DNA of 64,000 bases, taken from Lytechinus pictus (lineage: Eukaryota). The notes under the pieces were generated by a model that saw only the letters and a list, made by a program, of their open reading frames with translations, did no database searches and was not told the origin of the DNA. Both the position numbers and the translations under genes were made by a program. Where the stretch lies: assembly GCF_037042905.1 (NCBI RefSeq), contig NC_087258.1:13454001-13518000 (forward strand), given 5' to 3'. This document shows positions 10,011 through 58,580 of the stretch, one piece after another (position 1 is the stretch's first letter; each line of letters opens with the position of its first letter).

Positions 10011-13000
10011 GATATAGAGACGATCATAATGATACTAGGGAAAAGAGAAATGAATAACAGTAAATGGAAGAAATGATTCTTTTAACAAAAGCCCTTGCCG
10101 TCTCGTAAAAAAAAATTGAAAAGGGAAATATATGGGAAGATGAAGTAGGATCTTGGAAGCTGAAGCAGCCTCGTACCTTTGATGGCGACACAAAGGATAA
10201 TGAGGGATAAAAAGAGGAAAATAACAAGAAAGGAGGAAGAAGTTTTTAAAAATACATAGAAGTGGAAATGGAAAGAGAATTAACCAAAAATATCACACCT
10301 TTCAGGTTAATAAATTAAAATACTATTTTACTATATTCGGGCCTTTAACTGTAATCATCAAAAGTGATGATAGTATTAGGCACACGGCAAACTACTCCCA
10401 TATCCATAGCACTTGTTGTGATAATGACAATTCACTTGAAAGAGGTATTTGGGGATACGCAATTCTGCGCACTCGCTTCGCTCGCTACTGCGACTGTCAT
10501 TATTTCAGTTCAAGAAAAAAATATGCATGTTTCAATCTATTTTGTAAACCCTCACTTATAATGTAGTCATGTAAATAATTATCCCTCTATGTATTTAGCC
10601 CAGTAAATCAAGTGTGGTATTTCCGCCAGTTCCAAGCATATATTCGATATCCCCAAATGAAACTACATGTATAGGCCTATATATTGCACACTGGGCCCCT
10701 TTCAGGCATATATTACTGGAAATAAGGACCAAGGTATACTGATTACACTACAAAATTAATTATCCATGTACTAGTATATCCTATTATCCTAGGGACTTTT
10801 AGGGTTGACTGCATGTCTGGGCCTTATACAGAATAAACTTGATGGCATTGGCATGATTGGTATCTTTTAAAAACCTTAGCTGAGTGCATACAAATTCCAT
10901 CCAAAAAAGTTATATCCATGTATCACTTCTGCCGAAAAAAAATTGGTTGTTAGACATCTGTTTCCTTTTTGGCTGCTATCTGGACCCCCATACAGGGTAA
11001 ATTTGCTGGAATTGACAATTATCCATGTATGTCTTCAGCCTAAAATACACTTTTTGGGGAGGGGCACTATGGGGCTACTGTCTGGACCCCCGTACAGGAT
11101 AAAGTTGCTGGAATGTGTATTTTTGTGAGCCTTAAAGTATGCAGATTCCATTTCAAAAAATAATTGACCATGTACCTTTTCAGCTGAATAACCCAATTTT
11201 TGGCGGCACTTTGGGCCTACTGTCTGGGCCCCGTATACAGGATTAAGTTGCTGGCATGGGTATTTTTGAAAATCCCATTGCATACTGCCTCAATTACAAA
11301 AGGAATTATCCATGTACATTCTAGCTGAATAAATTAGTTGTGGGGCATATTGGCACTATGGGGCTACTGTCTGGGCCCCCGTACAGGGTAAAGTTGCTGG
11401 CATGAGTAGTTTTGTGAGCCTTAAAGTATGCAGATTCCATTTTAAAAAGAATTAGCCATGTACCCTTTCAGCTGAACAACCCCATTTTCGGGGGCCCTTC
11501 GGGCCTACTGTTTGGGCCCCGTACAGGATGAAGTTGCTGGCATGAGTTTTTCTTTACAAACCGCATTGTATACTGCATCCATTTCAAAAGAAATTATCCG
11601 TGTACGTTTTCAGCTGAATAAATTAGTTGTGGGACATATATGGGCACTTTGGGGCTACTGACTGGGCCCCCGTACAGGATAAAATTGCTGGCGTGTGTAT
11701 TTTTAAAAATCCCAATGTATACTGCCTCCATTGCAAAAGGAATTATCCATATACATTTTTAGCTTAATAAATTTGTTGTGGGACATATACAGGATATATG
11801 GGCACTTTGGGGCTACTGTCTGGGCCCCCGTACAGGATAAAGTTGCTGGCATGGGTATTTTGGGAAATCCCAATATATACTCGGTCCATTGCAAAAAGAA
11901 TTAGCCATGTACCTTTTCAGCTGAATAAACCCATTTTCGGGGGGCCCTTTAGGCCTACTGTCTGGGCCCCAGTACAGGATACAATTGCTGGCATGGGTAT
12001 TTTTGAAAATCCCAATGTACACTGCCTCCATTGCAAAAGGAATTATCCATATACATTTTTAGCTGAATAAACTAGTTGTGGGACATATACAGGATATATG
12101 GGCACTTTGGGGCTACTGTCTGGGCCCCCGTACAGGATAAAATTGCTGGCATGGGTATTTTTGGAAATCCCGATGTTTACTCAGTCCATTACAAAAAGAA
12201 TTAGCCATGTACCTTTTCAGCTAAATAAACCCATGTTCGGGGGGCCCTTTGGGCCTACTGTCTGGGCCCCCGTACAGGATAAAGTTGCTGGCATGGGTAT
12301 TTTTTAAAATCTCAATGTATACTCGGTCCATTGCAAAAAGAATTAGCCATGTACCTTTCAGCTGAATAAACACATTTTTGGGGCCCCTATTTGGGGCCAT
12401 CAGGGCCTTCCGTACAGGATATGGCCCGGCAGCAACACTTTTCCTTAATCACTGCCTTCATGCCAACATGATGGGACCATCAAACCTTTTGTACCCGATC
12501 AGCTGAATAAACTCTCCCAGCCCCCGGACTACTTGTCTAATATACGAAGTGCATCTTGTGATAATAACCCCGCTTTGCTCATCGCTCAGTTCCTTCAAGA
12601 GGAAATAAGGAGGGTAACATAATGAAAACAATTCACCCGACGGTTTCCGTATTACGATCAAATAGAATAAAAGGTCGATGTTTAAATTAATTAGCAGCGG
12701 CTTCCAGCAAAGATGGAACACATGTTGGAGTAGCATCCTTCGGGGGGGAGCTCTCGATGCCGTGTAAATACGACTGTTATTCGGATTCAGCCATTGTTTC
12801 GTGACCTAGTATTTCAAAAATGACATTTAAAAAGTTGAATGAACCAGAATTTTTAAAGCTCTTTATAGGTACTTCGTTCGCAAACATATTTTCCCTATCT
12901 ATCCAATATTTACAGATATTTGAAAAATACTAATTGAATCAGGAGACATTGGCAAGAGAAAATAAAGTAACCAGAACGTCGATCCCCTCCTTTCTTGTTA

Positions 13001-48782: not shown

Positions 48783-49783
48783 GGGTGTGTTTATGCTTCC
48801 ATTGCGAGGACAGAATCAGCGTTTTTTCAAATGTCGTTTCAGAACGCCGATCGTAAACGTGGTTCTGGGGTGCTGTTTATACTTAACTTTTCAGAGGCGA
48901 AATCACGATCTCCAGCTGGCTTCACATCGTAATTTTCGTTGAACAGGAAAGCGAGATCAAATTGGGCGCGCCCTTATTCGAAAGTTTTTTTTTTTTCGAG
49001 TGTTGTTATGGTCGTCTATTATTTAACCCTTTCCACGCATACTTCGCACCAATGCACACTCGTGCCGTGCGAACTTCGCATTTCACACTCAACAAACAAT
49101 GCATTGTTTCCCTCCCTGAAAATAATTCAGTACAGATGGGTTCATGGTCCAGCGCACAAAGAGTTAAACATCGAAAAATATCCGATATTTTAGTAATTCC
49201 ATGGAGCTACTTGACATAGCCATAGAATTTCCACCATGGTGATGATAATAGTGAGACAAAATAAAGAATATTAAAGTAGACATAAGGAAATAATAAGACA
49301 TCTATTTGTTTATGCTTCTGGCTCAGCGATGTCTCCTCATCATAATTCATGTTCCGGGATTTTTTTGTAAATCCCTCAACATTCATGGTGATTACAAATT
49401 AGAAGAGTATAGTGATAGTACTTAAATCAATAATCACACATGCAAATGTACATTGGTCATTATCAGAAACAGGGAGATGAGAGGCAATTCCGTGGAGGTA
49501 AATAGAACCATGCGACTGTATTTGCCCGCGGATTTTCATCTCACCGGAAGCATGTACCAAATGACGTCATTGAAACACATTTACGATCGTGGTTCTGTTT
49601 ATACTTCCCCAGAAACCCTGATTCTGGTCAAACGATGTATTGAAACGTACCTTTTTGTGAGTTTACGATCGGCATTCTGAAACGTTGTTTAAATGAAAGT
49701 AAGCATGGACACAACCGTGTTTTGGACTAATCACGTATGGAAACGCTGATTCTGGCCTGAAAAGTGGAAGCATAAACACGCCC
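48783..49783. mobile_element. PIF/Harbinger-type non-autonomous element
   Basis: GGGTGTGTTTATGCTTCCA...TGGAAGCATAAACACGCCC TIRs; TAA TSD on both sides. Confidence 0.8.
49027..49163. mobile_element. piggyBac-like mini element
   Basis: TTAA|CCCTTT...AAAGAG|TTAA with imperfect TIRs. Confidence 0.45.
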
Positions 49784-50826
49784 TAAGTTTTTGGTTTTAT
49801 ATTCTGCACCATACTGAGTGTACTCCTTTAAAGGAGTATGTGTATTTGTGCACGCATGTGATAGAGTATAGTGTAGTAATATTACAAAATTGCTTGCCAC
49901 ATACCCCTTTTTATAATCATCGCTTCCCTGGGGTCTCCGAACCATCTATGTACTATTTGCTTTTTTATCACTATGTGAATCCCTTTTTATACTTTTGATG
50001 GTTGAATAAATGAATTGAATACGTGATCATGTACGTTGCATCATAGGGCCGGCGCGGCCGGACATACGTCGGCTTTACCTTTACTTACATTGGGTTTAGT
50101 ACCGCCCCATGTCCCAAACCTCGCTCAAATCAGACGCTAAACATGTAATGTTGCCACAAAAAGTACATTGTTTATAAAGCGTTTTAGTCTTTTTATACCC
50201 TCGCAAATTGGGCCATAAACACATAGCTTTCCTAGCAAAATATATACCCTTTTTCAGTATTTTAGTGTTTTTGACACCCTTATCATGTTACATACATAAC
50301 ATTCCTAATCTTGAAAAGGAGACGCTTTTTACATGTTTCTTTGAGCATGATATCCACTCGTCAATGGAGGCACCCCTATATTTCAGCATAAATGAGAGAA
50401 ATTTAAAAGGGTACAAAACTTTCCAGTTACCTGTGGATTTGGATAGACTTGGAATAATCTGCACACAATTTGGCACGCATCTCTGATTATCAAAGTCCAA
50501 TTACTCCAAGGCAGACCTAGCATACTCTTTTCATAAGGAAATTCCATGGCGATTTAGCTTAGAAATTCCACTCAGAAATTGAATATAAATATTTCAGGGC
50601 TTAATGAAAATATTCCATCAAGTTCAAGTTCCTCCAATATAACAAAAGTTACAGGTTAATAGAATGGACTTTGCTTTCATCATTGCTTAGCATCTGCAAG
50701 AGATGTAACCCCAGAATCAATATGCAAATTATTCTCAATATTCCACACAATATTAATGAGGGCATTGCTTTACAGACCAACCTTACGACCTTTGACCTTG
50801 GCTCGTGATTCCACAACCTCTCTGTT

Positions 50827-50928
50827 TTACTGTGTAAAGTCGCTCCTGATACGGCCTGTGCTTATTCTTGCTAACATGCTGTATGGGTAGGGTAGGGCTA
50901 CAGCACTGGCCTCATTCAGCCGCTTCAT
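50827..50928 (-). CDS. Aldo-keto reductase alternative terminal exon G2 (distal)
   Basis: ttttttcttgtcatcag|ATG...TAA, 102 nt. Encodes MKRLNEASAVALPYPYSMLARISTGRIRSDFTQ*. Confidence 0.85.
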   Translation of the reverse strand: MKRLNEASAVALPYPYSMLARISTGRIRSDFTQ

Positions 50929-51119
50929 CTGATGACAAGAAAAAACACATACAAATAAAACCAAAAAAACAAAAAACATTAATACTTGAATAATTCATCT
51001 CAGCTTGGTATTGAAGAAGATATATTTGAAATGTTTTTACAGGTATTCTTTGTAGGAAATGAGATGTGCTGATTGATTGTTTCATCCAATAATACAAATT
51101 ATTGAAGAAATATTGATAG

Positions 51120-51290
51120 NNNNNNNNNNNNNNNNNNNNNNNNNNNNNNNNNNNNNNNNNNNNNNNNNNNNNNNNNNNNNNNNNNNNNNNNNNNNNNNNN
51201 NNNNNNNNNNNNNNNNNNNNNNNNNNNNNNNNNNNNNNNNNNNNNNNNNNNNNNNNNNNNNNNNNNNNNNNNNNNNNNNNNNNNNNNNNN
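51120..51290. other. Assembly gap (171 N)
   Basis: N run flanked on both sides by a similar ~45-bp sequence. Confidence 0.99.
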
Positions 51291-51640
51291 AATTGTTTAA
51301 TCCAATGATACAAACTATTGAAGAAATATTGATAGATGGATGGATGGATGAATGAATGAGTGAATGATAAATGAATGAATGAATGATTAGACGAAAGAAT
51401 GATATTCCAGGTTTGGTGGGAGAAAGTTGCCATCTCCCCCCCCCCACCACCACAAAATACACTTTTTAATCAAATTCAATGGATGTTAGGATGGAATTTG
51501 CCTTCATTGTGGCCATGCATCTTCACGAAAGTATCCCAGAATAAAACGATGACTCTATTATAAATTTTACAGAATTTATGAGGACTATGCTCATCCACAC
51601 CTGTGTATGATATGTGTAATATGAAACCCATCCATGTGCA

Positions 51641-51742
51641 TTACTGTGTACAATCGGTCCTGGGACGGTCCTTGCCTACTTTAGCTATTGTGCAGTAAGG
51701 ATATGGATGCGAAACAGCGCTAGCCTTATTTAGCCGTTTCAT
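51641..51742 (-). CDS. Aldo-keto reductase alternative terminal exon G1 (proximal)
   Basis: gatag|ATG...TAA, 102 nt, phase 0 after exon F. Encodes MKRLNKASAVSHPYPYCTIAKVGKDRPRTDCTQ*; ATTAAA on the - strand near 51465-51470. Confidence 0.8.
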   Translation of the reverse strand: MKRLNKASAVSHPYPYCTIAKVGKDRPRTDCTQ

Positions 51743-52409
51743 CTATCATCAGGTCACAAATAAAACAAGCATATTAGGTAAAATCGGATTAAGAATAATT
51801 TTTTTTTATACTGGGCACCCAGACACAATAGCACAGAGGCTTTCAATCAGTAACTAAGTTGTACTGGCCAATCGAGATCATTGTAGCATGCACATTTCGT
51901 TCAAACCTCTAACCCAGAACCAATCAGAATTGATCTTTCATATTCATCGCAAACCTTTGCATTGTTGGGATCTGAAGTATTTTTAGTGGTGTTCTGTGAA
52001 AGAAATCAGATTTACTGCTTTATTGTTGAAGGAATGAATGAATCAATCAATTAATGAAGGAACAAATGAAGAAATGAACAGACAAATAAAGGCACAATGA
52101 TATGATATGTCAAACGATTCTTGGGTTATCGCGGGAACAAGGCATCAAAGGTATATATTGGCCTCTGTGACCTTCAACCTTTGAACTCCATACCCCTTAA
52201 ACTAAGCAGTTCCTTGTCACTCCCATATACATGATCAAAATATGAAGTCAATTTGTCAAATAATTATTGAGTAATCGTGAGAACAGGATGGATTGACAAC
52301 CTGGAAACATAATGCCTCCAACACCATCTACGGTGGACAGACGCATAATAACAATTACCAAGATCAACTCTTCAGAATTACTTCAACACACAAATATTTA
52401 AAGGATTTG

Positions 52410-52985
52410 GGGATATTTGACAAAGAGTTAAGTGTGACTTATTTGCTTTTCACAATGCACATATTTTCCTTAACCCCCCAAAATTGGTGGGGCTAAGCTC
52501 AGCCCACTTCCTTTGGTTTCACACTACATTTTAGCAAAACGGGCTAGCATGGTAAATAGTAAGGTACTATCTGGCCCAGCAAGAAAGCAGGTTAGCCAGC
52601 TTATTGCAATGCTAAGAGATGCAGTGTGAAACGAAACAAGGCTAAGGAAAAGTGGGGCTAAGCATTAGCCAATCACAAAAGTCAAAATTGCACGTTAATC
52701 ACGCTCTGTGTGGCAAAATCATAAATATTCATGAGCTTTGTGCGATAGACTCGGGTTAAGGCCTTAACCCCGGCTAAGCAGTATGGGGTTAAGAAAGAAG
52801 TGTGAAACAAAAAAAAAGATAGTATGGGGTTAAGGAAATGCAGTGTAAAAAGCATATTACAGTTATGCTTACACGCTGACTGGCACATGATATGTAACAC
52901 GCAATCTTATTTATAACAAATTGCACGCCTGATTTGCCTTTTATACGACTCTAAGTCACACTTAACACTTTGTGAAACACCTCCC
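52410..52985. mobile_element. MITE with a probable nested insertion (~52445-52860)
   Basis: Outer inverted caaagagttaagtgtgactta / taagtcacacttaacactttg; interior has ttaacccc/ggggttaag and tttcaca/tgtgaaa inverted motifs. Confidence 0.5.
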
Positions 52986-53141
52986 TGAGTCTTCCAATAC
53001 AACACCCTAATCCTTCATTGGCCTCTCATCCTAATCCCTTTACATTGAAAGCACCCAAATACATAATACCCCCATCGTCCCCTCCCCCTCTTTAGGTCAA
53101 TATATTATGTTGTAACCCTAAATTGGTATTCTACAAAGTAC

Positions 53142-53281
53142 CTGTTGGTCAGTAAGTTCCCATCCTGCGGAAGCACCCATGTTGTTGTTGAGCTGGTCTA
53201 ATGTCTTCACTCCGATGATGACGGAGCACACAGCTTCTTTCTGTAGCAGCCATCGTAGGGCCACTTGGCTGACAGTCTTAC
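53142..53281 (-). CDS. Aldo-keto reductase exon F
   Basis: ttgtag|GT...CAG|gtactt, 140 nt. Encodes (G)KTVSQVALRWLLQKEAVCSVIIGVKTLDQLNNNMGASAGWELTDQQ (QVALxW and cofactor-binding region). Confidence 0.93.
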
Positions 53282-54531
53282 CTACAAACCAGAATGATTA
53301 AAACTCAATGACTTTATGTTAAATTAGACTAATGAATATAACTTTTCAAATAAAATTTTTCATATTTTTTTTTCTTTGTTAAACCAAATAATAAACGGTG
53401 AAATGTGTAGAGCAAAATAGACATCAGACAACTGAGACAACAAAAATCAGTGAATTTAAATTCAAATTAGACTCTTTAATCAAAATGCTTTTCAACTTTT
53501 TATGGAAAACCAAAGTCAATGAATGCTACTTTTCAAAAACAATTTTTTTTTGCAATTTCTTTTTGTTCATCGGTTAAACAAAATGCACTCTTCATTAATC
53601 ATTTCACAAGGTACATGGTCCACTATAGGTAGTAATACACGCTTGTAGGCATCATTCATTTGTGTATATATGTCAGCAATAATTAATATAGAATATATTA
53701 ATAGAACGTCACTGTAGAAGGATATTAATAATTTTGATGGATGTGCAATGAAATGGTCTAAAGTATAAGCAGGATTATCAAATGCATGGAATGGAGAGAA
53801 ATCAAAACTATATTTGTGGCAAAATGGGTAGCTTGCAGTGGCAGGAATATTAATTTCTCAAAATGCATATGATCTGGGAAGGAACAGTTAAAGCCATGAG
53901 CATTGCAAAAATGGGCCAAGTTTAAACTTTTGAAGTTAACAAACGTCAAATTGTTTCAGTTCTTGAGAACAAAGCAGAACAGATGGACAGACTCCCATCC
54001 TTAAAAAAAAAAATTTATCAGATTTTTACAAAAAAGACACAATATCACAAGGGGGTTGTAAATTGCTCTCCTCATACTTTGTTTTTATACAGAGAATTTT
54101 AAACTTCAAGGTCATTCCAGATGATTCCGGTGGATTCATGAGGATTAAGGACCTCTCAAATTATGCTTCAGTAGAGTGTTTTATAAAAGGAACCCCTTGA
54201 TTCGACCAGCATGAGCTTGAATTAGGACTTTCTGTGCATACACAAAGTAAACCTCCAGATCGGGATGATCTTATTGTGCATGTGTTAGAAATGAGTTTTG
54301 TGAGACGTATATCTATCAGATATGATTATTTACGTCTGGGACCGACCTCTGACGTCACCATCCGAAAGACATGACCAGGGCTTGAACCTCGAACATGTAC
54401 ATCAATTTGTTACTTCCCCACATAGCTTGGAATACAGGCACATGCCACATCGTCAAGTTTAAATTAAATTAAATCTAATCTCTTATAGGGGTCCTATTGG
54501 ATGGTTGTGACTCTATTAGGGTTCAACCTAC

Positions 54532-54707
54532 CAGCCTCCTCCGCTATCGACTGCATCACGTCCAAGAGATTCCAAACTTTCTCTTCTTGAGCAAACTTCG
54601 AGAAGCTTGGCTGGCTCTCACTTTTGACCTCCCCTTTGGCTTCCATGAAAGCGACTCTGCTGCCCTCTGGGGGCGAATCACGTTTAATCTTACCCGTCAA
54701 CCACCCC
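54532..54707 (-). CDS. Aldo-keto reductase alternative exon E2 (mutually exclusive with E1)
   Basis: Long pyrimidine tract, cccag|G...G|gtaggt, 176 nt. Encodes GWLTGKIKRDSPPEGSRVAFMEAKGEVKSESQPSFSKFAQEEKVWNLLDVMQSIAEEA(G); same length and phase as E1. Confidence 0.9.
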
Positions 54708-55204
54708 CTGGGTGTCATGGGAGGGAAGGGAAAAAGGAGGATAAGGAAAATGAATAGACAAATGAATGGGCAAAGTAGACCTTGCTGCTGTTACTGGTGT
54801 GTGAATGGAGTGCAGGGGTGTTTCATGGTGTTTGGCTCAAACTTTTGCATTTTTAGCTGGCACTCATCTGCGTATTGCCCGAATACAGAAAATGCAGTCA
54901 AATCCAACAAAACACAATGAAACAAGCATATAGGAGGTCAAAACTAATGCTTTGCATTCTAGCCCACTTATTTGCTAGTTTGGCTGGCTAATGCAGCAAC
55001 AGCAGCTACAAATAATGCAAAGGTGTGAGCCGGGCCTAAAGCTATTTGTAAAGTAATGCATAACCTTGTGACCAAATGAAAATGAGACAGCCCAAGTGTA
55101 AATGATTTTTTTTTAATAAAGTGTGACCATATTTATAATAATTTACATTAAATTGTAACAAGAATGTACATTGAATTGATTGTTAGCAACAAGAATGCTA
55201 TCTA

Positions 55205-58271: not shown

Positions 58272-58404
58272 AAAATCTCATCATCTTATACCGGCTTATA
58301 AATTTTTGTAAGCTAGCTTAGATGATTTTCTTAGATTTTCTCAAGCCCCCCCCCCCCCCCCACATAAAATGAATGCAAATAATAATACACAGCTTTGCTA
58401 TTAC

Positions 58405-58580
58405 CTTGATCATTTGCGATTGATTTCATTATGTCTAGTAGATTCCAGACTCTTTCTTCCCCCACAAATTCTGAAAAGGTTGGATGGCTTTCCCTAGCAA
58501 TGTATCGTCTGGTCTCAACGAATGCCACCCTACTCCCCTCCGGTGGGGAGTCTCGAGTCATTTTGCCCGTTAGCCAACCA
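58405..58580 (-). CDS. Aldo-keto reductase alternative exon E1 (mutually exclusive with E2)
   Basis: tgcag|T...G|gtaata, 176 nt. Encodes GWLTGKMTRDSPPEGSRVAFVETRRYIARESHPTFSEFVGEERVWNLLDIMKSIANDQ(G); in phase with exons D and F. Confidence 0.88.

What the first reader, a model, noticed from the sequence alone, without database searches (positions are those of the whole stretch)
50827..51742. Duplicated alternative last exons give two different AKR C-termini
G1 (MKRLNKASAVSHPYPYCTIAKVGKDRPRTDCTQ) and G2 (MKRLNEASAVALPYPYSMLARISTGRIRSDFTQ) are the same length, 19/33 identical, and share the PYPY motif and stop position. G1 has two cysteines that G2 lacks, a possible difference in redox sensitivity (inference). 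Each would carry a different 3' UTR. An assembly gap lies between them, but the copies look too divergent to be two haplotypes.
Basis: partly seen in the sequence, partly recalled or inferred. Interest (0 to 1): 0.7.

Follow-up and report, generated by a model that had tools for sequence, protein, structure and literature searches.

The report
Duplicated last exon, one copy used
A sea-urchin (Lytechinus pictus) reductase gene really has two tandem copies of its last coding exon, but all the RNA examined and all public gene models use only the downstream copy, so the intact upstream copy is an unproven candidate for a second protein tail.

Summary
Two 33-codon terminal exons lie on the minus strand: G1 at 51641-51742 and G2 at 50827-50928. 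They are 19/33 aa and 73/102 nt identical, and they are the only two such copies in the 812-Mb genome.

They are not haplotypes or a mis-join:
- Spliced RNA reads join exon F, on one side of the N gap, to G2 on the other.
- The gap-free L. variegatus locus has both exons in the same order.
- S. purpuratus and Diadema have a single G exon, so the duplication is confined to the Lytechinus lineage or was lost elsewhere.

In two raw RNA runs, 26 reads join F to G2 and none join F to G1. G1 has zero depth in all four runs laid. All RefSeq models (L. pictus X1/X2, L. variegatus X1/X2) end in the G2 tail.

G1 nevertheless looks maintained. Its frame, AG acceptor and an ATTAAA about 171 nt past the stop are conserved in both Lytechinus species, and its substitutions are biased toward synonymous (10 S : 10 N, P about 0.01-0.04).

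By homology with DepB (7UTF), the G exon encodes loop C, which reaches into the active site.

Most likely G2 is the default end and G1 is a rare or conditional alternative last exon. A recently silenced relic is nearly as likely. This would be a new member of a known kind, of modest interest.

The parts
53142..53281 (-). Exon F, the penultimate coding exon. It ends in phase 0 (...TDQQ) and is followed by a GT donor at 53140-53141.
   Evidence: RNA joints 53278/54529 (cut +3) and 50928/53142; splice context; 95.7% identical to L. variegatus.
51743..51744 (-). AG acceptor of G1 (TAG in L. pictus, CAG in L. variegatus). The pyrimidine tract is modest: 12/20, and 6/12 in the last 12 nt.
   Evidence: The single, constitutive G exon of S. 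purpuratus has an acceptor of the same strength and shares the motif tgacct..a..atag.
51641..51742 (-). G1, the upstream copy of the terminal coding exon (33 codons plus TAA). It would encode an alternative loop C. No RNA support was found.
   Evidence: Sequence; zero depth in 4 runs; ortholog in L. variegatus with 32/33 aa and 98/102 nt identical; substitution pattern.
51465..51470 (-). ATTAAA hexamer 171 nt past G1's stop, a candidate poly(A) signal for a G1-ending transcript.
   Evidence: conserved at +172 in L. variegatus. This is a consensus match only; no RNA 3' ends were seen there.
51292..51335 (.). Copy A of a 44-nt repeat, directly after the gap and followed by a (GATG/AATG)n microsatellite at 51336-51402.
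   Evidence: Its best match in L. variegatus is L002:17181-17222.
51120..51290 (.). Assembly gap (171 N) inside a local tandem repeat, in non-coding DNA between G1 and G2.
   Evidence: It is bridged at transcript level by the F->G2 joints. The flanks are collinear with the gap-free L. variegatus locus. Not filled.
51076..51119 (.). Copy B of the 44-nt repeat, directly before the gap.
   Evidence: Its best match in L. variegatus is L002:17315-17356.
50929..50930 (-). AG acceptor of G2, with a strong pyrimidine tract (15/20, and 10/12 in the last 12 nt).
   Evidence: used in all junction reads.
50827..50928 (-). G2, the downstream copy of the terminal coding exon (33 codons plus TAA). This is the copy actually used.
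   Evidence: F->G2 joint seen in 17 + 9 reads and 2 contigs. Identical to the C-terminus of RefSeq L. pictus isoforms X1 and X2.
50250..50826 (-). 3' UTR of the G2-ending mRNA, about 530-580 nt.
   Evidence: Contig pieces cover 50250-50928 and 50345-50928. Stranded depth of 2-8 is confined to one strand down to about 50400. Six molecules end at 50300.

Best explanation
The last coding exon of a YajO-like aldo-keto reductase gene was duplicated in tandem in the lineage leading to Lytechinus. The gene is the L. pictus one behind RefSeq models XP_063965444-6. The exon encodes the conserved LN..SA...YPY motif plus the C-terminal tail, which is loop C of the AKR fold.

The two copies diverged in complementary halves. 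G2 kept the ancestral first half and G1 kept the ancestral VGKDR block of the second half.

Shown: G2 is the default terminal exon. Exon F is spliced straight to it, skipping G1.

Shown from sequence only: G1 remains an intact, in-phase exon with an AG acceptor and a conserved ATTAAA.

Inferred: G1 is kept by protein-level selection because it serves as a minor or condition-specific alternative last exon. Use would require splicing F to G1 and cleaving at G1's own poly(A) site before the stronger G2 acceptor is used. That would give an enzyme with a different loop C.
For: Duplication is real and lies on one molecule:
- These are the only two copies in the genome.
- F->G2 junction reads span the gap.
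- Both exons sit 652 nt apart in the gap-free L. variegatus contig.
- S. purpuratus and Diadema have one G exon.

G2 is used:
- 26 junction reads and 2 contigs support it.
- All six RefSeq models end in a G2-type tail.

G1 is constrained:
- It has had no stop or indel since a duplication about as old as the S. purpuratus/Lytechinus split, whereas the flanks no longer align.
- The G1 branch shows 7 S: 9 N changes (omega about 0.38), close to G2's 0.25 and the S. purpuratus exon's 0.34. Adding the two Lytechinus tips gives 10 S: 10 N, P = 0.007-0.036 depending on the transition bias assumed.
- Every residue of the motif shared with bacterial relatives is kept in G1.
- Between L. pictus and L. 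variegatus, G1 is 96.1% identical against 90.7% for its flanks (P = 0.04), with 3 synonymous changes and 1 non-synonymous.
- The AG and the ATTAAA are conserved.
- The constitutive S. purpuratus acceptor is no stronger than G1's.

Functional relevance:
- In the close solved relative DepB (7UTF), loop C swaps into the partner's active site, and its last residue, Arg-343, is modelled on the substrate (PMC9427786; alignment).
Against: - No read touches G1 in four runs from three studies (depth 0.00 for 51600-51799), and no F->G1 joint was listed. The 95% upper bound on G1 use in the two raw runs is about 11%.
- The word shares of the other contig runs (0.21) equal what E2 + F + G2 + UTR alone would give (my arithmetic).
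- RefSeq pipelines for two Lytechinus species produced no G1 isoform.
- The selection tests rest on 16-20 substitutions. The species comparison loses significance if the better-conserved upstream intron (92%) is taken as the neutral rate.
- The tissues and stages of the coded runs are unknown, and only about 6% of each raw run was read.
Confidence: 0.48

Rival explanations
1. G1 is a relic. It worked as a coding terminal exon for much of its history but is now silent. It would be a pseudo-exon skipped because the downstream G2 acceptor is much stronger, and simply too young to have decayed.
For: - Zero RNA depth and no junction in 4 runs.
- No public model in two species.
- G1's branch is the longest of the three (16 changes against 11 and 13) and has the highest omega (0.38), which fits relaxed constraint.
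- Its pyrimidine tract is weaker than G2's.
- Conservation between the two Lytechinus species is only marginally above the flanks (P = 0.04).
Against: - Three of the four differences between the two Lytechinus G1 copies are synonymous, and there are no indels although the flanks have about 3 per 100 nt.
- The AG and the ATTAAA are both kept.
- All deeply conserved motif residues are intact.
- An acceptor of the same strength is used constitutively in S. purpuratus.
Confidence: 0.4
2. G1 and G2 are routinely co-expressed alternative last exons that give two abundant isoforms in ordinary tissues. This is the strong form of the first reader's reading.
For: Only the sequence anatomy supports this: two in-phase exons, each with its own acceptor and stop, plus a poly(A) hexamer after G1.
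Against: There are 0 of 26 junction reads to G1, zero depth on G1 in all runs laid, and no G1 isoform in RefSeq.
Confidence: 0.07
3. The pair is an assembly artefact: two haplotypes or two loci joined at the N gap.
For: A gap lies between the exons, and 44 nt are repeated on both of its sides.
Against: - The exons are 72% identical and their flanks do not align.
- Transcripts splice across the gap.
- The gap-free L. variegatus contig has the same G1 - repeat - repeat - G2 order.
Confidence: 0.02

Closest known systems
Tandem exon duplication-derived C-terminal substitutions, produced by alternative poly(A) use (for example 77 of 236 such events in human GENCODE; PMC8373072)
   Same: Adjacent homologous copies of the last coding exon, the same length, each with its own stop. 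The proximal copy would need its own cleavage site.
   Different: In the catalogued cases both ends are seen in transcripts and most are ancient. Here only the distal copy has transcript support, and the duplication is confined to one urchin lineage.
The E1/E2 mutually exclusive exon pair (loop B) of the same gene
   Same: Same gene and the same mechanism of origin by tandem exon duplication. Both pairs affect an active-site loop of the AKR barrel.
   Different: E1 and E2 are both in RefSeq isoforms X1/X2 of three species and predate the S. purpuratus/Lytechinus split. G1 is in no model, and S. purpuratus has only one G exon.
DepB-type bacterial AKRs (PDB 8HWN, 7UTF) and AKR loop C
   Same: About 50% identical over residues 4-342 (E 1e-90). 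The same LN..SA...YPY motif and a C-terminal tail of the same length, 15-16 residues past YPY. Loop C governs substrate binding and swaps between protomers (PMC9427786).
   Different: These are bacterial single-exon genes with one tail. The substrate of the urchin enzyme is unknown, and whether its tail is domain-swapped was not tested.
S. purpuratus LOC100889047 and the Diadema orthologs
   Same: Orthologous gene and exon structure, with the G exon spliced in phase 0 after ...TDQQ or its equivalent.
   Different: They have a single G exon. The S. purpuratus tail combines the first half of G2 with the VGKDR block of G1, as expected of the pre-duplication state.

Membership tests
Aldo-keto reductase superfamily (Pfam PF00248) | Significant match to the Aldo_ket_red profile along the protein | tested here: met
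   Exon-by-exon Pfam matches in the window, best E 2.8e-14. The full-length public models of this gene carry PF00248. PDB relatives match at E 1e-90.
Aldo-keto reductase superfamily (Pfam PF00248) | Catalytic tetrad Asp-Tyr-Lys-His | tested here: met
   In the alignment to 7UTF, the query's [13 protein letters not shown] and QIHAWD align with the DepB residues. PMC9427786 names Tyr-53 and His-122 of DepB as catalytic. Asp and Lys were read off the alignment by position only.
Tandem-duplicated alternative last exons (C-terminal homologous substitution) | Two adjacent homologous copies of the terminal coding exon on one chromosome | tested here: met
Tandem-duplicated alternative last exons (C-terminal homologous substitution) | Each copy has an acceptor in the right phase, its own stop and a poly(A) signal | tested here: met
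   AG acceptors, phase 0, TAA stops, and ATTAAA at +171 after G1. For G2, the UTR end at about 50250-50300 is seen in RNA. The G1 signals are consensus matches only.
Tandem-duplicated alternative last exons (C-terminal homologous substitution) | Transcripts exist that end in each copy | tested here: not met
   G2: 26 junction reads and 2 contigs. G1: no junction and zero depth in 4 runs, and no G1-type protein in public models. Sampling was limited: about 6% of two raw runs, tissues unknown.
Tandem-duplicated alternative last exons (C-terminal homologous substitution) | Both copies conserved under purifying selection across species | tested here: inconclusive
   Both copies are conserved in the two Lytechinus species, and G1's substitutions are biased toward synonymous (P 0.007-0.036). 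The numbers are small and only two species carry the pair.
Haplotype or mis-join duplicate at an assembly gap | Near-identical copies with alignable flanks, and absence of the pair from gap-free assemblies of relatives | tested here: not met
   72% nt identity, flanks that do not align, and the pair present in the gap-free L. variegatus contig.

The most novel reading that the evidence does not exclude
G1 is a Lytechinus-specific, conditionally expressed alternative loop C. It carries a new Cys17 next to the YPY motif and a changed distal tail, the part that in DepB reaches the partner's active site. Together with the proven E1/E2 loop-B switch, one gene could then make up to four reductases with different substrate or cofactor behaviour, with G1 switched on only in an unsampled tissue, stage or xenobiotic/oxidative stress.
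Probability: 0.3. Interest if true: 0.5.

Novelty: new member of a known kind. Interest (0 to 1): 0.3.

Why it matters
If G1 is used, it is a young and datable example of a new protein end arising by duplication of a terminal exon. The two copies diverged in complementary halves of an active-site loop, in an enzyme family whose C-terminal loop sets substrate choice. It would also add an exon missing from the current RefSeq annotation of two model sea urchins.

If G1 is not used, it shows that an intact, in-phase duplicated exon with good-looking signals is not evidence of alternative splicing. In either case the result settles that the assembly gap does not undermine the locus.

Tried and rejected
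1. Allelic-overlap reading of the 44-nt repeat at the gap edges. Rejected because L. variegatus has both copies 134 nt apart in gap-free sequence.

2. Search for further G-like exons in the genome. None were found beyond the pair.

3. Search for a decayed G1 in the S. purpuratus F-G intron. There was only a 13-aa match at E 0.22 and no nucleotide match, so I treat it as noise. Flanks of G1 and G2 against S. purpuratus gave nothing significant.

4. Search of the 5.8-billion-cluster protein collection with the G1 peptide to catch F+G1 fragments from transcript assemblies. G1's frame cannot be lengthened because the acceptor TAG is itself a stop. A spliced F+G1 or full-length G1-type protein has no reference, so I did not type one in. 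No G1-type protein could therefore be searched or folded.

5. Rfam scan of 50000-54800. It gave only a sub-threshold SNORD77-like match (27 bits against a cut-off of 35) on the strand opposite the gene and with no RNA depth, which I take as chance.

6. The paper on human tandem duplicated exon evolution (PMC9741552) has nothing on terminal exons.

Their word shares were used only as a rough hint.

Full report
**What is there**

The window is G000:C14:13454001-13518000. The contig length of 28,770,610 equals that of the record carrying the RefSeq models for Lytechinus pictus '1-deoxyxylulose-5-phosphate synthase YajO-like' isoforms X1 and X2. Both models end in the G2 peptide, residue for residue.

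The gene lies on the minus strand. Its first coding exon is just beyond the window (L001:~480-567). Further exons lie near 62.8k, 61.7k, 59.7-59.9k and 59.1-59.2k. Two copies of exon E lie at about 58.4-58.6k and 54.5-54.7k. Exon F is at 53142-53281. Two copies of the terminal exon follow: G1 at 51641-51742 and G2 at 50827-50928.

**Observation**

They are 19/33 aa and 73/102 nt identical, with the same length and stop position. Across the whole 812-Mb genome, each finds only itself and its partner. Outside the exons the two copies do not align. Both follow an AG and continue the phase-0 end of exon F.

**The gap**

The 171 N at 51120-51290 lie in non-coding DNA between G1's stop and G2's acceptor. 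Three lines of evidence show that the two sides belong together.
- RNA reads and assembled transcripts join 53142 (F, on G1's side of the gap) to 50928 (G2, on the other side) with GT..AG ends.
- The L. variegatus ortholog, fetched as a gap-free locus (L002), has F, G1 and G2 in the same order, with 652 nt between G1's stop and G2.
- The 44-nt repeat that borders the gap on both sides is also present twice in L. variegatus, 134 nt apart. Each L. pictus copy matches its positional counterpart best.

The gap therefore sits inside a small real tandem repeat next to a (GATG/AATG)n microsatellite. It is not a join of loci or haplotypes. I did not fill it.

**Which exon is used**

I laid two raw ribo-depleted RNA runs (X9, X10) and two contig runs (X1, X5) on 49000-54999.
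- The F->G2 junction (50928|53142) is seen in 17 + 9 reads and in one contig of each contig run.
- The E2->F junction is seen in 13 + 15 reads.
- Exons F and G2 have depth of about 7-9 on one strand only. The G2 3' UTR is covered down to about 50250-50300.
- The 200-nt bin holding G1 (51600-51799) has depth 0.00 in all four runs, and no F->G1 joint is listed.

With 0 of 26 junctions, the 95% upper bound on G1 use in these samples is about 11%. The other contig runs hold 0.21 of the sampled words. That is what E2 + F + G2 + UTR alone amount to (my arithmetic). Only about 6% of each raw run was read, and the tissues are not known to me.

**Public models**

A profile-free search with exon C led to a full-length relative. 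That relative led to the urchin proteins and their cluster members.

L. pictus X1/X2, L. variegatus X1/X2 and S. purpuratus X1/X2 differ only in the E exon, and all end in a G2-type tail. No G1-type protein is in those clusters.

**Evolution**

L. variegatus has a G1 ortholog that is 32/33 aa and 98/102 nt identical. Its acceptor is CAG, and it has an ATTAAA at +172 against +171 in L. pictus. S. purpuratus (L004) and Diadema setosum (L003) have a single G exon.

The S. purpuratus exon carries the first half of G2 (EASAVALPYPYSML) and the VGKDR block of G1. That block includes an identical 15-nt run. The ancestor was therefore of that hybrid form, and the two Lytechinus copies diverged in complementary halves.

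Three-way distances are star-like. By parsimony the branches carry about 16 (G1), 11 (G2) and 13 (S. purpuratus) changes. This puts the duplication near the S. purpuratus/Lytechinus split, or earlier with loss in S. purpuratus.

**Is G1 constrained?**

- Pairwise, G1 against G2 gives dN/dS of 0.22. In the motif half, pS is 0.83 against pN of 0.10. In the tail half, pS and pN are about equal at 0.31.
- On the G1 branch there are 7 synonymous and 9 non-synonymous changes (omega about 0.38). This compares with 0.25 for G2 and 0.34 for the constitutive S. purpuratus exon.
- Adding the two Lytechinus tips gives 10 S: 10 N, with P = 0.007-0.036 for transition/transversion ratios of 1-4.
- Between the two Lytechinus species, G1 is 96.1% identical, like G2 (97.1%) and F (95.7%). 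Its flanks are 90.7% identical (Fisher P = 0.04). G1 has no indels, while the flanks do.
- G1's acceptor is weaker than G2's, but no weaker than the S. purpuratus acceptor, which is used constitutively and shares sequence with it.

These tests rest on few sites. They argue that G1 was translated for much of its history, and they do so more strongly than they argue that it is translated today.

**What the exon encodes**

The closest solved relatives are DepB-type bacterial AKRs (8HWN, 7UTF; E about 1e-90). Their alignment runs through the YPY motif and leaves tails of equal length.

For 7UTF, the C-terminal loop C is described as 26 residues long. [quoted passage not shown] I derived the numbering offset of 20 from the catalytic Tyr.

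The G exon is thus essentially loop C. The half in which G1 and G2 differ most is the part that approaches the substrate. This is inference by homology. I could not fold a G1-type protein because it has no reference.

**Verdict**

The duplication is real, lineage-restricted and correctly assembled in order. G2 is the working terminal exon. G1 is an intact, apparently constrained and unannotated copy with no transcript support so far.

My odds are:
- 0.48 that G1 is a rare or conditional alternative last exon.
- 0.40 that G1 is a recently silenced relic.
- 0.07 that the two are routinely co-expressed.
- 0.02 that the pair is an artefact.

C-terminal substitutions from tandem exon duplication through alternative poly(A) use are a known class: 77 of 236 human events (PMC8373072). 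At best this is a new member of that class.

Noticed in passing
window 54292-54422 (intron between E2 and F): A stretch of about 130 nt has very high one-stranded RNA depth (about 750 in both raw runs). Nearly all reads carry the same fixed mismatches and have loose ends at both borders. The reads therefore come from a highly expressed near-copy elsewhere in the genome. There was no Rfam match at E <= 0.1.
   Followed up: partly
window 50979-51119 (intron just upstream of G2's acceptor): This block is 95.7% identical between L. pictus and L. variegatus. That is as conserved as the exons and more than the neighbouring intron (84-92%). It overlaps a sub-threshold SNORD77-like match at 50976-51036 on the opposite strand and shows no RNA depth. 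It could be a splicing or polyadenylation control element, or chance.
   Followed up: partly
window 51641-51646 and 50827-50832: Both G exons end CAG TAA, so the stop overlaps a donor-like GTAA. If G1 were spliced from that GT to G2's acceptor, the frame would read CAA TGA and give the same G1-type protein end. No reads support this; it is only a reading of the sequence.
   Followed up: no
L004:10769-10924 (S. purpuratus locus): A third, broken copy of exon E, with stops and a deletion, lies upstream of the two working E copies at 11366-11542 and 12408-12581. Exon E was therefore duplicated more than once.
   Followed up: no
window 58403-58579 and 54530-54706: The E1/E2 pair (loop B) of the same gene. 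Both versions are in RefSeq isoforms X1/X2 of L. pictus, L. variegatus and S. purpuratus. Diadema has one E exon. This pair was already followed up by another report.
   Followed up: partly
window 49000-49800, 50000-50400 and 52400-53000: These stretches have RNA depth on both strands from reads only 90-95% alike, with many loose ends and odd joints. They are dispersed repeats, not part of the gene's exons. L. pictus/L. variegatus identity collapses to 45% below 50246, where the G2 UTR ends.
   Followed up: no
proteins P0292 (L. pictus, 290 aa) and P0293 (S. purpuratus LOC587705, 315 aa): Two public models, one an L. pictus accession no longer among its X1/X2 isoforms and one a second S. purpuratus locus, run through the donor of the E2-type exon into the intron and end early. 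These look like truncated predictions rather than real isoforms.
   Followed up: no
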